DNA of 63,992 nucleotides, filler included, from Octopus bimaculoides (Eukaryota): the NCBI RefSeq assembly GCF_001194135.2. It is 6 parts of 6 records of this genome, joined end to end, with 100 filler letters (N's around TTAATTAATTAA, not from the genome) between each part and the next. Parts side by side here need not be neighbours in the genome. Positions count along the whole stretch, not along the records: positions 1 to 24,816 come from NC_068989.1; 5 more parts are not named here. One strand, given 5' to 3'. How positions within the stretch are numbered: position 1 is the first letter of the stretch; each line of letters opens with the position of its first letter. Both the position numbers and the translations under genes were made by a program. The notes below the pieces were generated by a model that saw only the letters and a program-made list of their open reading frames with translations, had not been told where the DNA came from and searched no databases. Shown here in pieces: positions 2,442 through 24,157 of the stretch.

Positions 2442-3475
2442 TTCAACCACGGTAGTGGTTGTATATATTCTTAAGTCCACCATTTCNNNNNNNNNNNNNN
2501 NNNNNNNNNNNNNNNNNNNNNNNNNNNNNNNNNNNNNNNNNNNNNNNNNNNNNNNNNNNNNNNNNNNNNNNNNNNNNNNNNNNNNNNNNNNNNNNNNNNN
2601 NNNNNNNNNNNNNNNNNNNNNNNNNNNNNNNNNNNNNNNNNNNNNNNNNNNNNNNNNNNNNNNNNNNNNNNNNNNNNNNNNNNNNNNNNNNNNNNNNNNN
2701 NNNNNNNNNNNNNNNNNNNNNNNNNNNNNNNNNNNNNNNNNNNNNNNNNNNNNNNNNNNNNNNNNNNNNNNNNNNNNNNNNNNNNNNNNNNNNNNNNNNN
2801 NNNNNNNNNNNNNNNNNNNNNNNNNNNNNNNNNNNNNNNNNNNNNNNNNNNNNNNNNNNNNNNNNNNNNNNNNNNNNNNNNNNNNNNNNNNNNNNNNNNN
2901 NNNNATTAGCGCGCCAGGTGAAATTCTTAACTGTATTTCGTCTGATTTTGAGTTCAAATTTCGCCGAGGTCGACTTTGACGTACAGATTCTTTCACTAAC
3001 TTTTTTTTTTTTTTTTTTAACTAAACCCTTTCAAACTTCCGATACTGGTAGAACGTGTCACACAGAACAGGCTTTACTCTTAACGTTTTTGAAAAAAATT
3101 CACATTTAGAAGCAGTGTTTCCTCTGTCTTTACGTTCTGATTTAAAATTCTGTCCCGGTCGACTTTACCTTACATCGATTTCGGATCTATTCAACTAGAC
3201 GTACAGATTATTTAATTAATTTTTAAAAAAACTAAACCCTTTCAAACTTCCGATGCTAGTAGAATGTGTCACACAGAACAGGGTTTACTCTTAAGGTTTT
3301 GGACAAAATTTTGTATTTTAGAAGTTATTTCGTCAGAAGTTACAGAGAGACAATGGACAAATTTGTGTTTGATAAGTGCCAATACACGAATCTCTCAGCT
3401 TTTGATTTACTCTCTGGAATGATATATATACATATTACATATATATTACATATATTACATATATGATATATATGT

Positions 3476-5960: not shown

Positions 5961-6590
5961 ATTTTTCACACACATACATAATTTTTCATTGTGAAAACTT
6001 AGTTCTTTTCACAGTATCTGTTGCTTTCGCTCGTCAGTTTATCATTCTTGCTTATATTACTTTTCGCAACACGTATTATGAAATCGACAGTTATGCACCT
6101 AAATAATTTCTTTTTGTACACTTTGGCACCATCTATTACTCAACACACGCACTGTTCCTTCACATTTTTTCTATATCACATATATTGTTGGTTTAAAAAA
6201 ATTTTTTTTACATTATTTCAATCTCAGAACATTGTACCGGTTAACATTTTTCATATGAGAGATAATTATTACTTCTAATTATATGATATCTTTCATTTTT
6301 TCGATAAACGGACGAACACAGGCGTCGAACACAGGCGTCGAACACATGCAGCCAAGACGCCTCCTGTCAGACATGCATTACTTTTACAAATATCTTGAAG
6401 GTATTTCTACGTTGAACAATGACATTGAAATAAGCTAGCTTTCTTTTTTTTCTTTGTAATATTCTAATTAAAAAAAAAAAATGAAATCACATTCACTTAT
6501 ATATCAAGTGGAATCATCATCGACTGTGTACTGATGAACACCTTACTGTTGATGAGTCTTTCGCAATATTATACTATATATATATAGGCG

Positions 6591-7071
6591 CAGCAAAATT
6601 AGAAATATAATATTTCTAAATCTCTCAGAGAGATTTAAGCAGTAGTGGAGCGACAAAGTTGTAGTATATTGTCAACTTAATGTGACGATGACGAGTAAAG
6701 ACTCAGAAACATGTCCCTGAATGCTGCCTAGGCTGGGTGGGGGAGCTTGTCTCCCCTTCACAAACTTAAGGACACAGTAATTGTGTCAAGGCCGACAGGA
6801 AGCGGTCCAGCTTCCTAGGGCTAAACAGCAGTAGTGTATTCCCTTATTGGGATTGTCACATTAAGTTGACAATATACTACAACTTTGTCGCTCCACTACT
6901 GCTTAAATCTCTCTGAGAGATTTAGAAATATTATATTTCTAATTTTGCTGATCAGTGAATGAACTTCACTATGATTTACATAAGTTTGTGAAAGAGAAAC
7001 AGGCGTCTCTATCCAGCTGGAAAGCTACTTCAGGCTGATGACGAGCAAAAACTCAGAAACATGTCCCTGAA
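6591..7071 (+). mobile_element. Hammerhead-containing tandem element (non-LTR retrozyme-like): 350-nt monomer plus a 96-bp 5' inversion
   Basis: GATGACGAG..CTCAGAAACATGTCCCTGAA repeats at 6687 and 7037 (period 350). 6591-6686 is the exact reverse complement of 6855-6950. Right end is lost in a 100-N gap. Confidence 0.75.
7029..7071 (+). ncRNA. Minimal type I hammerhead ribozyme motif
   Basis: TTCAGG (stem I) CTGATGA CGAG-CAAAAA-CTCA (stem II: GAG/CTC with a C.A closing mismatch) GAAA CATG (palindromic stem III) TC | CCTGAA (stem I'). GUC cleavage triplet ends at 7065; 6-bp perfect stem I. Confidence 0.75.
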
Positions 7072-7687
7072 NNNNNNNNNNNNNNNNNNNNNNNNNNNNN
7101 NNNNNNNNNNNNNNNNNNNNNNNNNNNNNNNNNNNNNNNNNNNNNNNNNNNNNNNNNNNNNNNNNNNNNNNTATATATATATATATATACATACATATAT
7201 GCATACATATATAAATACATACATGAACACACGCACACGTGTCTGTTTGTGTTTGTGTGTGAGACCATGTATGTATAACATACATTACATTTACACATAC
7301 AATATAGCCTATGTATATATATGTATATATTCCTATATTTGACAATATATATACATATATTTATATATACATATATGTATGCATATATTAATTGACGGGC
7401 ATGTGTATCTAAGCATATATGTATGTATAATATAATATAATATGATATAATATATATTATATTAATAGATAGATGACAACATCAACATGAGGAACAATGA
7501 TGATAATGCGGTCAAGTAGTGGCCAAAATTATTTGTCCTCTACAAGGGGTCTGGCAGCTGCAAGCCCTTGTTAGGATAGGTTTAATTAAAGATGTGTCAA
7601 AAAATAGAAGAAAGAAAATGATTTTTAAACCAAAAGTCTGTCTGTCTGTATGTATGAATGTTTGCATGTATGTATTCAAGTATACTA

Positions 7688-11285: not shown

Positions 11286-11611
11286 TTTCATTTATTTGCC
11301 ACAAGGGCGTTGGCTGAAGGAACAATACAAAGACAGACGTAATATTGTGGTTTACATATAACGAAATGATTAAAAAAAATTAAGTATACATGTTATACAT
11401 TGAAAAAGAAGGGACGTATATGGAACATACTAAAGCTAAGAAAAAAAAAAGTGTGGCGGAAAGGATGATAAAAAAATGGCGGAGAGAAGGCCCTCCTGAC
11501 ACAGGAAGGCCTCTAAGGATAATCGAGGAACCCCACTGTCCGAGATTTCCCTGAAAGCCCCAAAACAAGTACCCTCCCCAATTCCTTCTCTCCGACTCAC
11601 AGGTCTACACT

Positions 11612-11840
11612 TTTTTCTACTAAAGGCACAAGGCCTGAAATTTTGGGTGAGTGGTGAGTTGGGGGTGGGCTAGTCGATTTCATCAACCCCAGTGTTTCGC
11701 TGGTACTTAATTTATCGACCCCGAAAGGATGAAAGGCAAAGTCGACCTCGGCGGAATTTGAACTCAGAACATGAAGACGGACGAAATGCCGCTCAGCAGT
11801 TTGCCCGGCGTGCTGACGATTCTGCCAACTCACCGCCTTA
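11612..11840 (-). mobile_element. tRNA-derived SINE family B (about 220 bp, (ATT)n tail)
   Basis: Sense strand AAGGCGGTGAGTTGGCAGAATCG (A-box-like), GAGTTCAAATTCC (B-box-like), CTTTCATCCTTTCGGGGTCGATAAATTAAGTACCAG core. Many further copies, e.g. 12780-13001, 14682-14884, 58065-58280 (+), 59820-59984, 62121-62290. Confidence 0.85.
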
Positions 11841-12753: not shown

Positions 12754-13672
12754 ACATCAGGGCATACAAGAATCATAATAATCCTTTCCACTAAAGGCAC
12801 AAGGCCTGAAACTTTTGGGGAGGTAAGAGCTAGTTGATTGCGTCAAACCCCAGTGTTTCGTTGGTTCTTAATTTATCGACCCCGAAAGAATGAAAGGCAA
12901 AGTCGATCTCGGCGGAATTTGAACTCAAAACGTAAAGACGGACGAAATGCCGCTCAGCAGTTTGACCGGTGTGCTAATGATTCTGCCAACTCACCGCCTT
13001 AACAACAACAACAACAACATACCTTTCTTCTATAGACACAAGGCCTGAAACTTTGGGGGAGTGGGGAGGGCTATTCGACTTTATCGACCCTAGTGCGTAA
13101 CTGGTATTTATTTCATCGACCCCGAAAGGATGAAAGGCAAAGTCGACATCNNNNNNNNNNNNNNNNNNNNNNNNNNNNNNNNNNNNNNNNNNNNNNNNNN
13201 NNNNNNNNNNNNNNNNNNNNNNNNNNNNNNNNNNNNNNNNNNNNNNNNNNNNNNNNNNNNNNNNNNNNNNNNNNNNNNNNNNNNNNNNNNNNNNNNNNNN
13301 NNNNNNNNNNNNNNNNNNNNNNNNNTATATATATATATATATATATATATATGACGGGCTTCTTTCAGTTTCCGTCTACCAAATCCACTCACAAGGCTTT
13401 GGTCGGCTCGAGACTATAGTAGAAGACATTTGTCAAAGTTGTGCCACGGTAGTGGGACTGAACCCGGAACCACATTGTTGGAAAGCTAGCTTCTTACCAT
13501 AAAGCCATGCCTGCACCTTGCACAAGACATTTCGTACTTCTCAAGTATATATAAGGGTTCTAGACAGGAAAACGTTAAACACTGATAGTCAGTCACTCGA
13601 TTAAATGAATTCTCTATTCACGGAATTATAGAATAAATGACTACAAATACCAAATATGTGTATCCTTTAGGT

Positions 13673-14681: not shown

Positions 14682-14883
14682 AATCCTTTCTGCTGAAATT
14701 TGTGGGGAGGGGAATAGTCGATTACATCGACCCCAGTACTCAACTGGTACTTATTTTATTGACCCCGAAAGGATGAAAAGCGAAGTCGACGTCGACGCAG
14801 TTTGAACTCAGAACGTAAAGACGGAAGAAATGGCGCTAAGCATTTCGCCCGGGGTGCTAACGGTTCTGCCAGCTCGCCGCCTT

Positions 14884-14884
<1 letters not shown>
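14682..14884 (-). mobile_element. SINE family B copy
   Basis: Same consensus as 11612-11840; flanked by (AAT)n and (AAC)n(AAT)n. Confidence 0.8.
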
Positions 14885-14957
<73 letters not shown>

Positions 14958-14960
<3 letters not shown>

Positions 14961-16676
14961 GAGTTAGAACCAGCGGAGAGCTACAAATACCTAAAGGTAC
15001 TTGAAGGGGACGGAATCAGGCATTCAGTGATGAGGGAAAAGATCAGGAAAGAATGTTATCGCAGGGTGAGAGCAATACTCAAGACAGAGCTGAATGCAAG
15101 AAACAGTATCGAAGCGATCAATGCTTTAGCCATATCAGTCTTGACTTACAGTTTCAATATCATTAACTGGTCAATAACTGAAATGTGTAATCGTGACAGA
15201 AAAATACGAAAACTGTTGACAATGCATAAAATGCACCACCCCAAGGCAGATATAGAACGACTTTATCTGCCAAGAAAAGAGGGAGGCCGTGGACTTTTAC
15301 AACTGAAATTAACAATGAAGATTGCCACAATTGGCCTAGACACCTACCTGAAAAACTCTGATGACTGGATGTTAAAACTTGTCTCAAAACATGAACACAA
15401 GAAAGCATCATACTCATTAACAAAATAGGCAAAGGAATATCTAAGTGAATTCCAAATTCAACTAAGTCCGGAATTAGACATACGAGAAACAAGCGCAGAA
15501 AAAGCTAAGTGCATGAAAACCCGTGCTAAAACTGATTCCTTAGATATTCTGACTGATAAATGGCAGGAAAAAACCTCTCAATGGCAAATGCCCAAAGAGA
15601 GCGAATAATGCCGATGTTGACCTATCAATGGCTAATTTGTTAAATGCCGACCAAGTAACACCAGAGTGGTTGACAATGGGTAGGACAGTGCTGTGCTTGA
15701 AAAACATCGAAAAAGCAATATGGTAGACAATTACAGGCTGATATCCTGCTTGCCACTTATGTGGAAATTATTAACTGGAATAGTCGCAGAGTCAATGTAC
15801 TGACATCTGGAAAAAAATGGAGACCTGTTACAAGAGCAGAAGGGTGGCAAGCGTAAGTGCAGAGGTACCAAGGATCAACTCCTGGTAGACAAAACTGTAC
15901 TTAGAGACTGCAAGAGGAGGAAAGCTAACTTGGCTATGTCATGGCTCGATTATCGTAAGGCGTACGATATGACCCCACATTCTTGGATTATGGAATGTAT
16001 GAAGCTATTTGGTATTGCATCGAATGTTGAGCGATTGCTTGGAAAAAGTATAGCGAACTGACAGCATATGGAAGCAGTTTAGGGACAATAGAAATCAAGA
16101 GAAGCATCTTCCAAGGGGACTGCCTGTCCCCACTGATCTTTGTACTGTGCATGATACCACTAACAATGATTCTGAAGAAAGCAAAGGCTGGGTATGTATT
16201 CAAAAGCCGCCAACAAAAAGTCAACCATTTGTTATTCATGGATGACCTTAAACTTTATGGTAAAGATGAATCCCAAATGAGTTCCCTCGTTGATACGGTG
16301 TATACTTTCAGTGCTGATATCAGAATGGAGTTCGGATTGAAAAAGTGTGGTGTGTTAGTCTTGAAGAGAAGCATCATCGAAAATGATAATGCAAAGATCC
16401 TATGGGATTTTATGATTCAGTGCGACCATGAGATAGAGAATAGGAAGCCAGACATAGTGTTAAATGAGAAAGAAAGCAGACGATGCTGGATCATAGATAT
16501 AGCATGCCCAGCTGACAAGGTGTGCGATAAGGAAGAAAGAAAAGTCAAATAGATATGACAGGTTAGCTTGGGAGGTCAAGCAGTTGTGGTCAATGAAAAA
16601 ACTGGTAGTAGTACCAATAATTGTCGGAGTCCTGGGAACAGAGAGTAAAACTCTTGAGAAGTACTTGGAACAAATA
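14958..16676 (+). pseudogene. R4/Dong-clade RLE non-LTR retrotransposon fragments in scrambled order: post-RT/thumb piece (14958-15632), RT piece (about 15635-16369), RLE endonuclease piece (16370-16676)
   Basis: YKYL..KIRKLLTMHKMHHPKADIERLYLPRKEGGRGL; [41 protein letters not shown]; ILWDFMIQCDHEIENRKPDIVL..IIDIACP (PD..D RLE motif). Internal stops and frameshifts; begins directly after (AAT)n. Confidence 0.85.
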
Positions 16677-17323
16677 GGTGACGAAAAATGGTGCATGTAC
16701 ATCAATATGAAGCAGCGTAAGGAATGGCTTAGCCCCGGTAAACAAGCGACACCACGCGTGAAACAAGATCTTCATTCGCGTAAAACGAAGTTGTGCGTAT
16801 GGTGGGACTGGGATGGGATTATCTATTACGAATTGGTTGAACGGAACCAAACGGTCAACGCGGAACTCTATGTTCAACAGATGGAACGACTCAACACGGC
16901 TATTCAAGAGAAAAGACCTCATCGGCAGCATGGAGTTCTGCTGCACGACAACGTTCGCCCTTATATGGCCAATATGACCAAGGAAGCCATTCAAGCGCAT
17001 GGCTGGGAAGTGCTGCCACACCCGCCGTACTCTCCTGATTTGGCACCAACGGATTTCCACCTCTTTCGATCTCTTTCAAATGCTATGCGCGGAGTTTCGT
17101 TCAATACTGATGCAGAATTGAGAGCTTGGTTGGGTCAATTTTTCGAGTCGAAATTGGGTGATTTCTACCAACGAGGTAATGAAAATCTTGTTAAACGTTG
17201 GGAAGAAGCTGTAAACAACAAGGTTGAATACATTATTGATTAATTAGTTGTTATTTTTTATTAAACCTTTTAAAAAATTTAAATTAAAAAAAAAACGGTG
17301 GGAACTTAGTTGCCAACCCAATA
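16677..17323 (+). mobile_element. 3' half of a mariner transposon with an open DD34D catalytic domain and right TIR
   Basis: GDEKW..KLCVWWD..LLHDNVRP..HPPYSPDLAPTDFHLF (34 residues between the second and third Asp); stop at 17241-17243; ends GGGAACTTAGTTGCCAACCCAATA. Confidence 0.9.
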
Positions 17324-21975: not shown

Positions 21976-22098
21976 ATGGACCGGTTTCTGGGCTGGCATT
22001 ATAGCCTCACCCTCCTCAGCACTCATTACCACGATGGAGAGCCCCAACCCATCACGTTGAAGTCTGCGCTGCAACTGATTCGTTTTGCGCCGACTCAT
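21976..22098 (-). CDS. Candidate initial coding exon of an unidentified gene (MSRRKTNQLQRRLQRDGLGLSIVVMSAEEGEAIMPAQKPVH)
   Basis: ATG in GCTGCC-ATG context, 41 codons, donor CAT|GTGAGT in phase 0; unique, GC-richer sequence amid repeats. Confidence 0.5.
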
Positions 22099-23174: not shown

Positions 23175-23841
23175 TACATACACAATACACACACGTGTAT
23201 ATATGTACGTATGTATGTATACATGAATGTATGTATGAATGTATCTATCTAGATATTAAATCAATAATAAGTAATATTATAAGCTAACCTGTATGTAATT
23301 ATTTTGACAGTAATTCAATATTTATGTGGGTGGGATACTTCTCTTATCTTGCTTAGGTTTTGATGTTTGTTATAATATACTTTGCATTGAATAAAATGCA
23401 AACCTTAAACTAACCAAAGCACAACACCTCTTTTCAATTTGTTTTGACCGTGTTTCTTAGTATTTCGTTAACAATGCAGAATATTTCTTTGTCACATTTG
23501 TAGATGATATCCTCATTAGAAGGATCACACGCACGCACGAATACACATGAGCACACACGCACAAATAGACGAGCGCGCACACATATCCACACGCACATAT
23601 ACACACACTCAATTTCAATCACATTCTCTCACCCACTTACGCATACGTTTCATACATGTATATGACTATATACACAGGTGCTGACATTCAAAACTGTATA
23701 AAACATATATACATACATAGGTACAGGAGTGGCTGTGTGGTAAGTGCCGGGTTCAGTGTCTTCTACTATAGCCTGTTGCCGACCAAAGCCGTGTGAGTGG
23801 ATTTAGTAGACGGAAACTGAAAAAAGCCTGTCGTGTATATG

Positions 23842-23888
<47 letters not shown>

Positions 23889-24157
23889 NNNNNNNNNNNN
23901 NNNNNNNNNNNNNNNNNNNNNNNNNNNNNNNNNNNNNNNNNNNNNNNNNNNNNNNNNNNNNNNNNNNNNNNNNNNNNCCCCCCCCAACATCGCCTGACAA
24001 CCGATGTTGATGTGTTTACGTCCCCGTAATTTTGCGGTTCGGCAAAAGAGCCCGATAGAACAAGTACTAGGCTTACAAAGAATAAGTCCATCCATCCACC
24101 CACCCAAACACCAGCCCACCCATCCATCCATCCATCCATCCATCCATCCATCCATCC

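What the first reader, a model, noticed from the sequence alone, without database searches (positions are those of the whole stretch)
6591..7071. Candidate octopus retrozyme: 350-nt hammerhead-to-hammerhead monomer, extensively self-paired, with a perfect 96-bp 5' inversion
Seen: two hammerhead motifs exactly 350 nt apart, with predicted GUC cleavage after 6715 and 7065. The second has a complete type I fold with a 6-bp stem I; the first lost its 5' arm exactly where a 96-bp inverted copy of internal sequence begins (6591-6686 = reverse complement of 6855-6950). The released 6716-7065 RNA is full of hairpins (GGGGAG/CTCCCC, GACACA/TGTGTC, GGAAGC/GCTTCC, TAAATCTCTC/GAGAGATTTA, AGAAATAT/ATATTTCT, AGTGAA/TTCACT) and has a 12-bp long-range helix (TTCACAAACTTA near 6757 with TAAGTTTGTGAA at 6981). 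It has no ORF. Known: non-LTR retrozymes, tandem few-hundred-nt units with type I hammerheads that form circular RNAs, are described from other animals such as mussel, coral and axolotl; Penelope-like elements carry minimal hammerheads and give 5' inversions. Inference: a non-autonomous, circRNA-producing retroelement of octopus copied by Penelope RT. More monomers may be hidden in the 100-N gap at 7072. Caveat: stem II closes with a C.A mismatch in both copies.
Basis: partly seen in the sequence, partly recalled or inferred. Interest (0 to 1): 0.88.

Follow-up and report, generated by a model that had tools for sequence, protein, structure and literature searches.

The report
Hammerhead-ribozyme retroelement copy, Penelope-style insertion
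This is one partly broken copy of a short, non-coding mobile element with a self-cleaving hammerhead RNA motif; the host genome holds thousands of copies, so it adds a member to a known class rather than a new kind.

Summary
Two hammerhead (HHR) motifs lie exactly 350 nt apart. The one at 7029-7071 is complete. The one at 6687-6715 is cut between U4 and G5, exactly where a perfect 96-nt inverted copy (6591-6686 = reverse complement of 6855-6950) begins. The 350-nt unit has no ORF and folds far better than shuffles (z about -7 to -8).

It is not single-copy. Reads from the same coded organism give roughly 2,400 HHR copies. The catalytic core is invariant. Two helix I base pairs switch G-C to A-U and U-A to C-G at matched frequencies of 25-32%. 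Many copies abut (TA)n, as this one does.

The layout matches published Penelope-like element (PLE) insertions: more than one unit, an inverted 5'-truncated piece, and a microsatellite target. The unit matches non-LTR retrozymes, for example the 350-390-bp mussel ones.

Not shown: self-cleavage and circular RNA. RNA reads are few, fall equally on both strands, show no pile-up at the cleavage site, and give only two back-joint reads. This locus alone cannot release the 6716-7065 RNA, because its first ribozyme is broken. "Octopus" could not be checked, because the organism is coded.

Verdict: a real new member of a known kind, of moderate interest.

The parts
6574..6587 (.). (TA)n microsatellite on the left flank, the presumed target. 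It is followed by GGCG before the element starts.
   Evidence: Read. Many other family copies abut (TA)n (loose ends).
6591..6686 (-). Inverted 5'-truncated piece of the element: the exact reverse complement of 6855-6950. Its outer end corresponds to unit position 6950.
   Evidence: 96/96. Contigs from other runs join the left flank to it up to 6620 (X3 and X13 records of 683 nt).
6687..6715 (+). 3' part of a hammerhead (G5 to C17). C3, U4 and the 5' strand of helix I are missing, so it cannot cut after 6715.
   Evidence: It carries T6696, a variant present in only about 5-6 copies of the genome.
6716..7065 (+). One 350-nt unit counted from cleavage site to cleavage site. It has no ORF, GC is 42%, and it is strongly self-paired.
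6716..6768 (+). 5' arm of the long imperfect helix that extends hammerhead helix I. It pairs with 6981-7034.
   Evidence: (I2). Family variants at 6716/7034, 6720/7030, 6727/7021 and 6760/6989 are compatible with compensatory change.
6855..6950 (+). Direct-orientation counterpart of the inverted piece. It contains the two near-perfect hairpins 6904-6924 and 6922-6942. Common genomic 3' ends of family copies lie at about 6883 and about 6938-6950.
   Evidence: Boundary loose ends.
6981..7034 (+). 3' arm of the long helix. It ends in the 5' strand of helix I (7029-7034).
7029..7071 (+). Complete type I hammerhead: helix I 7029-7034/7066-7071, CUGAUGA 7035-7041, helix II 7042-7055, GAAA 7056-7059, palindromic ACAUGU 7059-7064, cleavage after C7065.
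7072..7171 (.). 100-N assembly gap. It hides the right end of the insertion.
   Evidence: Other copies continue after the HHR with the start of the unit (loose ends at 7065-7069).
7172..7189 (.). (TA)n on the right side of the gap, continuing the target microsatellite.

Best explanation
The locus is a young, partial insertion of a short non-autonomous retroelement into a (TA)n microsatellite. The element has a 350-nt unit, no ORF, and carries a type I hammerhead ribozyme.

Proposed life cycle (inferred by analogy with retrozymes and PLEs):
1. A transcript with at least two units folds into a rod-like structure.
2. Two hammerheads pair through the palindrome ACAUGU to build a stable helix III. 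Each cuts after GUC.
3. The 350-nt monomer, with 5'-OH and 2',3'-cyclic phosphate ends, can be circularised by a host RtcB-type ligase.
4. The RT-endonuclease of an autonomous Penelope-like element nicks (TA)n and copies the RNA. This yields copies of more than unit length, 5' truncations and inverted 5' pieces.

How this copy would have formed:
- First-strand synthesis ran through one whole unit and stopped 29 nt into the preceding one, between U4 and G5.
- A second, inverted cDNA covering unit positions 6950 to 6855 was joined to it. That geometry fits twin priming, and equally a PLE-type inverted 5'-truncated copy.

Consequence: only the downstream ribozyme is intact, so the locus as seen cannot release a unit-length RNA.

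Shown: the anatomy, the copy number, the (TA)n flanks, conservation and covariation of the ribozyme, and the presence of transcripts.
Inferred: cleavage, circularisation and the PLE partner.
For: Anatomy.

Strong self-pairing of the unit, with helix I continued by a long helix.

Dimer pairing of ACAUGU is favoured in cofolding (-26.8 kcal/mol against 2 x -10.4).

Copy number:
- DNA reads of organism A at roughly 0.7x coverage give depth 0 on the flank.
- Depth is about 1,700 on the HHR and about 2,000 just downstream.
- About 250 reads are at least 99% alike, which indicates a young subfamily.

Continuity:
- Continuity from the pre-HHR region through the HHR into the unit start: 86 reads.
- Continuity across 6883 and 6950 in DNA reads and RNA contigs.
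- So continuity around the whole unit is seen in the family.

(TA)n flanks at different element boundaries in many copies.

Other inverted junctions at other breakpoints.

HHR variation:
- Core, helix II and helix III show less than 5% variation over about 1,700 reads per run.
- The 38 nt upstream have about 20 variable sites.

Matched frequencies at paired positions:
- 7034 G>A 27-29% with 6716 C>T 25-27%
- 7030 T>C 28-32% with 6720 A>G 25-27%
- 6727 G 86% / A 12% with 7021 C 83% / T 15%

Literature:
- PLE insertions show partial tandems, an adjacent inverted 5'-truncated copy, a 30-40-bp tail, a (TA)n bias, and assembly problems (PMC8557442).
- Mussel retrozymes have 350-390-bp units and about 5,000 HHRs (PMC7229834).
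- Retrozymes have been proposed to be PLE derivatives (10.64898/2026.07.22.740005).
Against: - No Rfam hammerhead hit, even at E<=10.
- The base of helix II is a C.A mismatch. Read another way, it is an extra C after A9 plus an extra A before G12, and I know of no description of that extra A.
- No cleavage assay was possible.
- RNA reads are sparse (depth about 50-150 in 6% of each run) and equal on both strands. About 40% come from one variant copy. None pile up at 6716 or 7066. Only 2 RNA reads show the 350-nt back-joint, against 86 in DNA.
- No autonomous PLE with the same 3' end was found. No PLE RT lies in the window.
- The covariation rests on matched allele frequencies, not on linked reads.
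- Array length at this locus is hidden by the gap.
- The two HHR copies differ at 2 of 35 positions while the inverted repeat is 96/96. That speaks weakly (Fisher p about 0.07, my arithmetic) against a monomeric circle as template for this insertion.
Confidence: 0.75

Rival explanations
1. It is a hammerhead-bearing satellite. The 350-nt units are amplified at the DNA level by unequal crossing-over or replication slippage, not by reverse transcription. The ribozyme is a passenger.
For: Head-to-tail continuity is seen in DNA reads. Classical HHR satellites such as newt satellite 2 and Schistosoma Sm-alpha look similar (PMC4209133). The gap at 7072 could hide an array.
Against: Copies are dispersed, with many different flanks. 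Their 5' ends vary (for example 6762, 6782, 6688), their 3' ends recur near 6883 and 6938-6950, and they abut (TA)n. Inverted junctions occur at several breakpoints. This locus is bounded by (TA)n on both sides and holds only a little more than one unit in 481 nt.
Confidence: 0.08
2. It is not a separate non-autonomous family. It is a fragment of the pseudo-LTR or 3' UTR of an autonomous Penelope-like element whose terminal region happens to contain the HHR twice.
For: PLE HHRs sit in pLTRs near the 3' end. Most HHR copies have an upstream region too divergent to align with this one: depth falls from about 1,700 to about 430 at 7023. Several families therefore share the HHR and the downstream part.
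Against: The HHR-to-HHR distance is 350 nt with no ORF. Continuity around the whole 350-nt unit is seen in other copies. No RT or EN coding sequence adjoins it here.
Confidence: 0.1
3. The HHR-like motif is a decayed or never-active relic. The element is an ordinary short retroposon whose spread does not depend on self-cleavage or circles.
For: There is a C.A at the base of helix II, no Rfam hit, and no RNA ends at the cleavage site. Naiad PLEs thrive without HHRs. Metazoan PLE HHRs cleave poorly in vitro.
Against: The core is invariant over about 2,400 copies while the flanks vary. Two helix I pairs change in a compensatory way at matched frequencies.
Confidence: 0.2
4. The locus structure is an assembly artefact of a short-read draft. 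Dispersed repeat copies were stitched together at the shared HHR.
For: The contig ends in a gap. In contigs of the 2015 sample, one path runs 6660-6719 and then into unrelated sequence (CATTCGCAGG...). No contig at 98% identity or more covers 6996-7016.
Against: The CATTCGCAGG path belongs to a separate locus that holds a solitary 32-nt fragment, 6688-6719, inside a 2,448-nt unique contig (X10). A contig with T6696 followed by AAT exists in X2. Raw reads from 2026 runs carry this copy's private alleles at 6993, 7005 and 7021, about 5 reads each. The left junction is present in independent runs. Contigs show presence, not absence.
Confidence: 0.07

Closest known systems
Non-LTR retrozymes of metazoans (Cervera & de la Pena 2020, PMC7229834), especially the Mytilus galloprovincialis family
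   Same: Unit of a few hundred nt: 350 here, 350-390 bp in mussel. No ORF and low GC (42%). One type I HHR per unit. Thousands of HHR copies per genome. A highly self-paired predicted RNA in which helix I continues into a long helix. A helix III that is too short to be stable alone.
   Different: Circular and linear unit-length RNAs are demonstrated for coral, mussel and axolotl, but not here. This locus shows only about 1.1 units. The HHR here has a C.A mismatch at the base of helix II. No cephalopod case is in the searchable literature.
Penelope-like element insertions (Craig et al. 2021, PMC8557442; Cervera & de la Pena 2014, PMC4209133)
   Same: Partial tandem (pseudo-LTR-like duplication). 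An inverted 5'-truncated copy abutting the 5' end. A short extension of about 30 nt: 6687-6715 is 29 nt. Insertion into (TA)n. HHR near the 3' part. Palindromic 15.2-16.2 and loop 3. An extra nucleotide after A9. A tendency to break short-read assemblies.
   Different: No RT or GIY-YIG ORF, and a unit of only 350 nt. The clades reported with (TA)n preference (Naiads) lack canonical HHRs, and in cephalopods are reported only as old remnants. The partner clade is therefore unknown.
Non-autonomous PLE derivatives such as MRC1 of Chlamydomonas (described in PMC8557442), and the Xenopus retrozyme families related to PLE pLTRs (10.64898/2026.07.22.740005)
   Same: Short non-coding elements that make pLTRs and multicopy head-to-tail insertions, thought to borrow a PLE's RT.
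   Different: For those elements, sequence similarity to an autonomous family's 3' end was shown. Here that test could not be run.
L1 5' inversions by twin priming
   Same: The inverted segment (6855-6950) lies 5' of the start of the direct segment (7037-equivalent) in the template. Its outer end is the more 3' coordinate. A short stretch is missing at the inversion junction (6951-7036, 86 nt).
   Different: The element family and the enzyme differ. No microhomology is visible at the junction.

Membership tests
Hammerhead ribozyme, type I | Conserved core C3 U4 G5 A6 N7 G8 A9 / G12 A13 A14 / A15.1-U16.1 / H17, with three helices and helix I open | tested here: met
   7035-7065 with helix I 7029-7034/7066-7071. 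It is the only site in the window, with 0 in 300 shuffles.
Hammerhead ribozyme, type I | Match to the curated Rfam covariance models | tested here: not met
   No hammerhead family was reported at gathering score or at E<=10. The 3' context is cut by the gap after 6 nt of helix I.
Hammerhead ribozyme, type I | G10.1-C11.1 closing pair of helix II | tested here: inconclusive
   C7042 lies opposite A7055. If C7042 is the extra nucleotide after A9 that is typical of PLE HHRs, then G7043-C7054 is the G10.1-C11.1 pair, but an unpaired A7055 remains before G12. About 10% of copies have U7042, which gives U-A.
Hammerhead ribozyme, type I | Self-cleavage after H17 | not testable with these tools
   No assay was possible. 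RNA reads show no excess of ends at 6716 or 7066, but power is low.
Hammerhead ribozyme, type I | Helices supported by covariation | tested here: met
   Helix I: G-C to A-U at 7034/6716, and U-A to C-G at 7030/6720, all at 25-32%. This rests on frequencies only; linkage was not observed.
Non-LTR retrozyme | Short non-coding unit (about 170-400 nt) of low GC with one type I HHR | tested here: met
   350 nt, GC 42%, longest open frame 48 aa.
Non-LTR retrozyme | Head-to-tail tandem copies, from dimers to multimers | tested here: inconclusive
   The locus shows 1.1 units and then a gap. In the family, continuity around the whole unit is seen, but array lengths could not be measured. No long-read run was available.
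Non-LTR retrozyme | Accumulates as unit-length linear and circular RNA | tested here: inconclusive
   Transcripts exist. Only 2 RNA reads carry the back-joint, coverage is equal on both strands, and the libraries are of unknown selection.
Non-LTR retrozyme | Highly self-paired RNA | tested here: met
   z -6.8 linear and -8.2 circular.
Penelope-like element insertion (architecture) | Partial tandem plus an adjacent inverted 5'-truncated copy | tested here: met
   6591-6686 is inverted; 6687-7071+ is direct and longer than one unit.
Penelope-like element insertion (architecture) | Microsatellite, (TA)n, insertion bias | tested here: met
   Both flanks here are (TA)n. There are many (TA)n loose ends at element boundaries in other copies.
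Penelope-like element (autonomous) | ORF with a telomerase-like RT and a GIY-YIG endonuclease | tested here: not met
   There is no ORF in the unit. The only RT fragment in the window (16151-16552) is 9 kb away, below the Pfam cut-off, and unrelated to this locus.
Non-autonomous PLE derivative | 3' region shared with an autonomous PLE of the same genome | not testable with these tools
   No access to the genome or a repeat library. The protein-based route to other copies failed.

The most novel reading that the evidence does not exclude
Its recurrent DNA breakpoints between U4 and G5 of the ribozyme (6686/6687 here, 6688 in solitary fragments, 7036 in about 24 reads of X24) would mark where the Penelope RT stops or switches template. 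That would give a sequence-level handle on the poorly understood PLE integration mechanism.
Probability: 0.25. Interest if true: 0.6.

Novelty: new member of a known kind. Interest (0 to 1): 0.42.

Why it matters
Retrozymes and PLE hammerheads are documented in many invertebrates, including a mussel. I found no description for a cephalopod in the searchable literature.

If the organism is an octopus, this family of about 2,400 ribozyme copies, with a young subfamily, would extend the class to a lineage known for unusual RNA biology. It would also offer a compact case in which three things are visible together: the ribozyme, the PLE-style insertion scars (inversion, tail, (TA)n target), and the population variation. 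That supports the recent proposal that animal retrozymes are non-autonomous PLE derivatives.

For genome annotation, it explains an assembly gap. It also flags a repeat that standard RNA-family scans miss.

Tried and rejected
- Rfam scans at gathering score and at E<=10 gave only noise, with no hammerhead.
- An exact-pattern scan of JGI metagenome contigs for the HHR gave 0 hits.
- I tried to collect family copies through 'proteins' called on repeat contigs, using the 48-aa open stretch. No hit.
- I tried to reach a better assembly or the organism name through a mariner ORF in the window. It is not on record.
- Long-read runs to span the gap: none are served for PacBio or Nanopore.
- I considered that the assembly is chimeric, because contigs of the 2015 sample run from 6660-6719 into CATTCGCAGG. 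I rejected this as the main reading. That path is a separate locus with a solitary 32-nt fragment sharing the two 31-mers, and other evidence supports the reference path.
- I looked for microhomology at the inversion junction. None is at the breakpoint: the 'AT' at 6688-6689 lies beyond it.
- I used the 2/35 versus 0/96 contrast to argue against a monomeric circular template. It is only weakly significant (p about 0.07), so I kept it as a hint.
- I considered A-to-I editing of the 96-bp double-stranded hairpin. The RNA variant spectrum shows no A>G excess at the arms.
- tRNA-derived SINE origin: no tRNA-like gene is found in the window.

Full report

Yes. The segments 6687-6721 and 7037-7071 are direct copies, 33 of 35 identical, with a start-to-start spacing of exactly 350. 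The 29-nt core pattern occurs nowhere else in the piece, and none is expected in shuffles. The stretch 6591-6686 is the perfect reverse complement of 6855-6950.

Read from the sequence, the downstream motif is a complete type I hammerhead:
- helix I: UUCAGG (7029-7034) pairs with CCUGAA (7066-7071)
- core: CUGAUGA (7035-7041)
- helix II: C.A, G-C, A-U, G-C, with a 6-nt loop (7042-7055)
- GAAA (7056-7059)
- helix III: only A-U and C-G around AU, so 7059-7064 reads ACAUGU, a palindrome
- cleavage after C7065

A descriptor I wrote for such motifs finds only this site in 24.8 kb on either strand, and none in 300 dinucleotide shuffles.

The upstream copy begins at G5. It lacks C3, U4 and the 5' strand of helix I, and the break coincides with the end of the inverted piece.

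The 350-nt unit has no ORF. The longest open stretch on a tandem copy is 48 aa. GC is 42%.

It folds at -128.9 kcal/mol against -87.8 +/- 6.0 for shuffles (z -6.8). As a circle, z is -8.2. Neighbouring windows give z between -2.8 and +1.7. In the fold, helix I runs on into a long imperfect helix, 6716-6768 with 6981-7034.

One negative: Rfam reports no hammerhead, even at E<=10.

**2. Is it a family?**

The organism is coded (organism A), so 'octopus' could not be checked.

DNA reads of two 2026 runs were read to about 1.9 Gb each. I assume a genome of about 2.7 Gb, which gives roughly 0.7-fold coverage. Depths at 82-90% likeness were:
- 0 on the unique flank 6200-6589
- about 1,700 over the hammerhead
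- about 2,000 over 6716-6755
- about 2,100 over 6800-6829

That is on the order of 2,400 hammerhead copies.

About 250 reads are at least 99% alike, so a near-identical young subfamily exists.

Contig word depths tell the same story: up to about 5x10^5 against about 48 for unique sequence.

A second coded species holds about half of the sampled words. Two others hold none.

**3. How are copies built and where do they sit?**

Reads and contigs show continuity along three stretches:
- from the pre-hammerhead region through the ribozyme into the unit start (86 DNA reads with the '350 back' joint; loose ends after 7065-7069 read as the unit start)
- from 6806 to 7049
- across 6883 and 6950

Continuity around the whole 350-nt unit is therefore a family property.

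At the same time, many copies end near 6883 or 6938-6950, or start at various internal points. These boundaries repeatedly abut (TA)n. Inverted junctions at other breakpoints also occur.

The locus itself has (TA)n at 6574-6587, and again directly after the gap at 7172-7189.

This is the architecture described for Penelope-like elements: 5' truncation, partial tandems that make pseudo-LTRs, an adjacent inverted 5'-truncated copy, a 30-40-bp 'tail', microsatellite targets, and frequent breakage of short-read assemblies (PMC8557442). The 29 nt at 6687-6715 fit the tail.

The inverted piece has the geometry of twin priming. It covers unit positions 6855-6950. In the template, these lie 5' of the point (7037-equivalent) where the direct copy stops. 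Its outer end is the more 3' coordinate, and 86 nt are missing between the two.

**4. Is the ribozyme under selection?**

About 1,700 reads per run cover the HHR. Among them, no position of the core, of helix II (other than G7043>A at about 5%, listed below) or of the palindromic helix III varies at 5% or more.

The variable positions are:
- the C after A9 (7042 C>T, about 10%, which would create a U-A pair with A7055)
- G7043>A (about 5%)
- two loop II positions, 7049 and 7050. At 7050 the locus carries the minority A.

In contrast, the 38 nt upstream carry about 20 variable sites.

In helix I, frequencies at paired positions match:
- 7034 G>A (27-29%) and its partner 6716 C>T (25-27%)
- 7030 T>C (28-32%) and its partner 6720 A>G (25-27%)

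These correspond to G-C to A-U and U-A to C-G.

One pair further along the helix, 6727/7021 is G/C in about 85% of copies and A/T in about 13%. This locus has C/A. 6760/6989 also shifts A-U to G-C.

These are allele frequencies, not linked reads, so the covariation is suggestive rather than proven. Together with the invariant core, it argues that source elements need a working hammerhead.

The C.A at the base of helix II can be read as the extra nucleotide between A9 and G10.1 that PLE hammerheads conserve (PMC4209133). The unpaired A before G12 has no precedent I know of.

The architecture is the common metazoan type I form, which is expected to act as a dimer: 6-bp helix I, 4-position helix II, and a 1-2-bp helix III with a small palindromic loop. 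Cofolding two copies does pair ACAUGU with ACAUGU (-26.8 kcal/mol against 2 x -10.4).

**5. RNA**

The element is transcribed: contigs appear in several RNA runs.

In three 2026 RNA-seq runs (X37-X39), the picture is weak:
- Depth is modest.
- Coverage is equal on both strands.
- In the two runs (X37, X39), about 40% of reads covering 6728-6756 come from one variant copy (6728G/6749C, and a shared loose end after 6756).
- No excess of molecule ends is seen at 6716 or 7066.
- Only two reads carry the back-joint.

So neither self-cleavage nor circles are shown. The libraries may well be unsuitable for the test.

**6. What this locus can do**

Only the downstream ribozyme is intact. Cutting after 7065 is possible in principle, perhaps helped by pairing with the truncated copy's ACAUGU. 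Cutting after 6715 is not. The 6716-7065 RNA therefore cannot be released from what is visible.

Any read-through transcript would also form a perfect 96-bp hairpin.

The two hammerhead copies carry different minority alleles: T6696 in about 5-6 genomic copies, and A7050 in about 11% of reads. The inverted repeat, by contrast, is 96/96. This hints that two different template units or molecules were copied, rather than a monomeric circle. The contrast is only weakly significant.

**7. Assembly check**

Contigs of the 2015 sample run from 6660-6719 into unrelated sequence.

A 2,448-nt contig explains this. A solitary 32-nt fragment, 6688-6719, sits in unique DNA elsewhere and shares the 31-mers.

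Several results support the reference path:
- The left junction is present in independent runs.
- The inversion junction k-mers exist.
- A T6696-AAT contig exists.
- Raw reads carry the copy's private alleles.

I rate an artefact as unlikely, but it is not excluded.

**8. Comparison and novelty**

The unit matches non-LTR retrozymes (PMC7229834). Mussel units are 350-390 bp, with about 5,000 HHRs.

The insertion matches PLE architecture.

A 2026 preprint argues that animal retrozymes are non-autonomous PLE derivatives.

Octopus genomes are reported to contain PLE families.

No paper in the searchable library mentions hammerheads or retrozymes in cephalopods beyond a remark on Naiad remnants.

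I therefore class it as a new member of a known kind.

**9. Verdict**

- Interest is moderate.

Noticed in passing
window 6686/6687; also 6688 and 7036 in reads: Breakpoints recur between U4 and G5/A6 of the ribozyme core. Three cases: this locus's inversion junction; solitary 32-nt fragments 6688-6719 embedded in unique DNA at two or more loci (preceded by ...AAAAGTCGA, followed by CATTCGCAGG...); and about 24 reads in X24 that leave the element right after 7036. This may be an RT stop or switch site. It remains unexplained.
   Followed up: partly
reads on window 6718-6782: In one subfamily, the segment after the cleavage site is replaced by a perfect palindrome, AGGTTCGTCCATCGATCGATGGACGAACCT. 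The window has a related GGACGAAC motif and a 13-nt tandem repeat (CGAACACAGGCGT x3) at 6313-6351.
   Followed up: no
window 6904-6942 (and inverted at 6599-6637): There are two adjacent near-perfect hairpins, TAAATCTCTC/GAGAGATTTA and TTAGAAATAT/ATATTTCTAA. In RNA they are over-represented relative to DNA. Many RNA reads leave the element at 6942 into one fixed sequence (AACATTTTTCTGATG...), and read ends pile at 6904. This is probably one expressed host transcript that carries a fragment.
   Followed up: no
window 16584-17243 (+): A mariner/Tc1-type transposase ORF: Pfam Transposase_1 E 4e-24, DDE_3 E 4e-8. It lies just downstream of the two reverse-transcriptase-like ORF fragments (14802-15428 and 16151-16552; RVT_1 E 2.5e-5, below the cut-off).
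   Followed up: partly
window about 594-760, 2900-3000, 11597-11800, 13093-13400, 14802-14860, 23766-24029: A short repeat recurs on both strands, next to (TA)n or (CA)n tracts and assembly gaps. In translation it shows up as ...RPRKDERQSRPRRNLNSE... or ...GFFQFPSTKSTH.... It is probably an abundant SINE-like element. ARAGORN finds no tRNA-like head.
   Followed up: no
whole window: There are thirteen N runs in 24.8 kb, and most are bordered by microsatellites (TA, CA, TCTA-like). The draft assembly breaks at simple repeats. The gap at 7072 therefore need not hide a long array.
   Followed up: no
window 21979-22019 (-): A weak hammerhead-core-like match (CUGANGA...GAAA) with only a 3-bp helix I. 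It is of the kind that shuffles also produce (mean 0.12 per shuffle), so I regard it as chance.
   Followed up: yes
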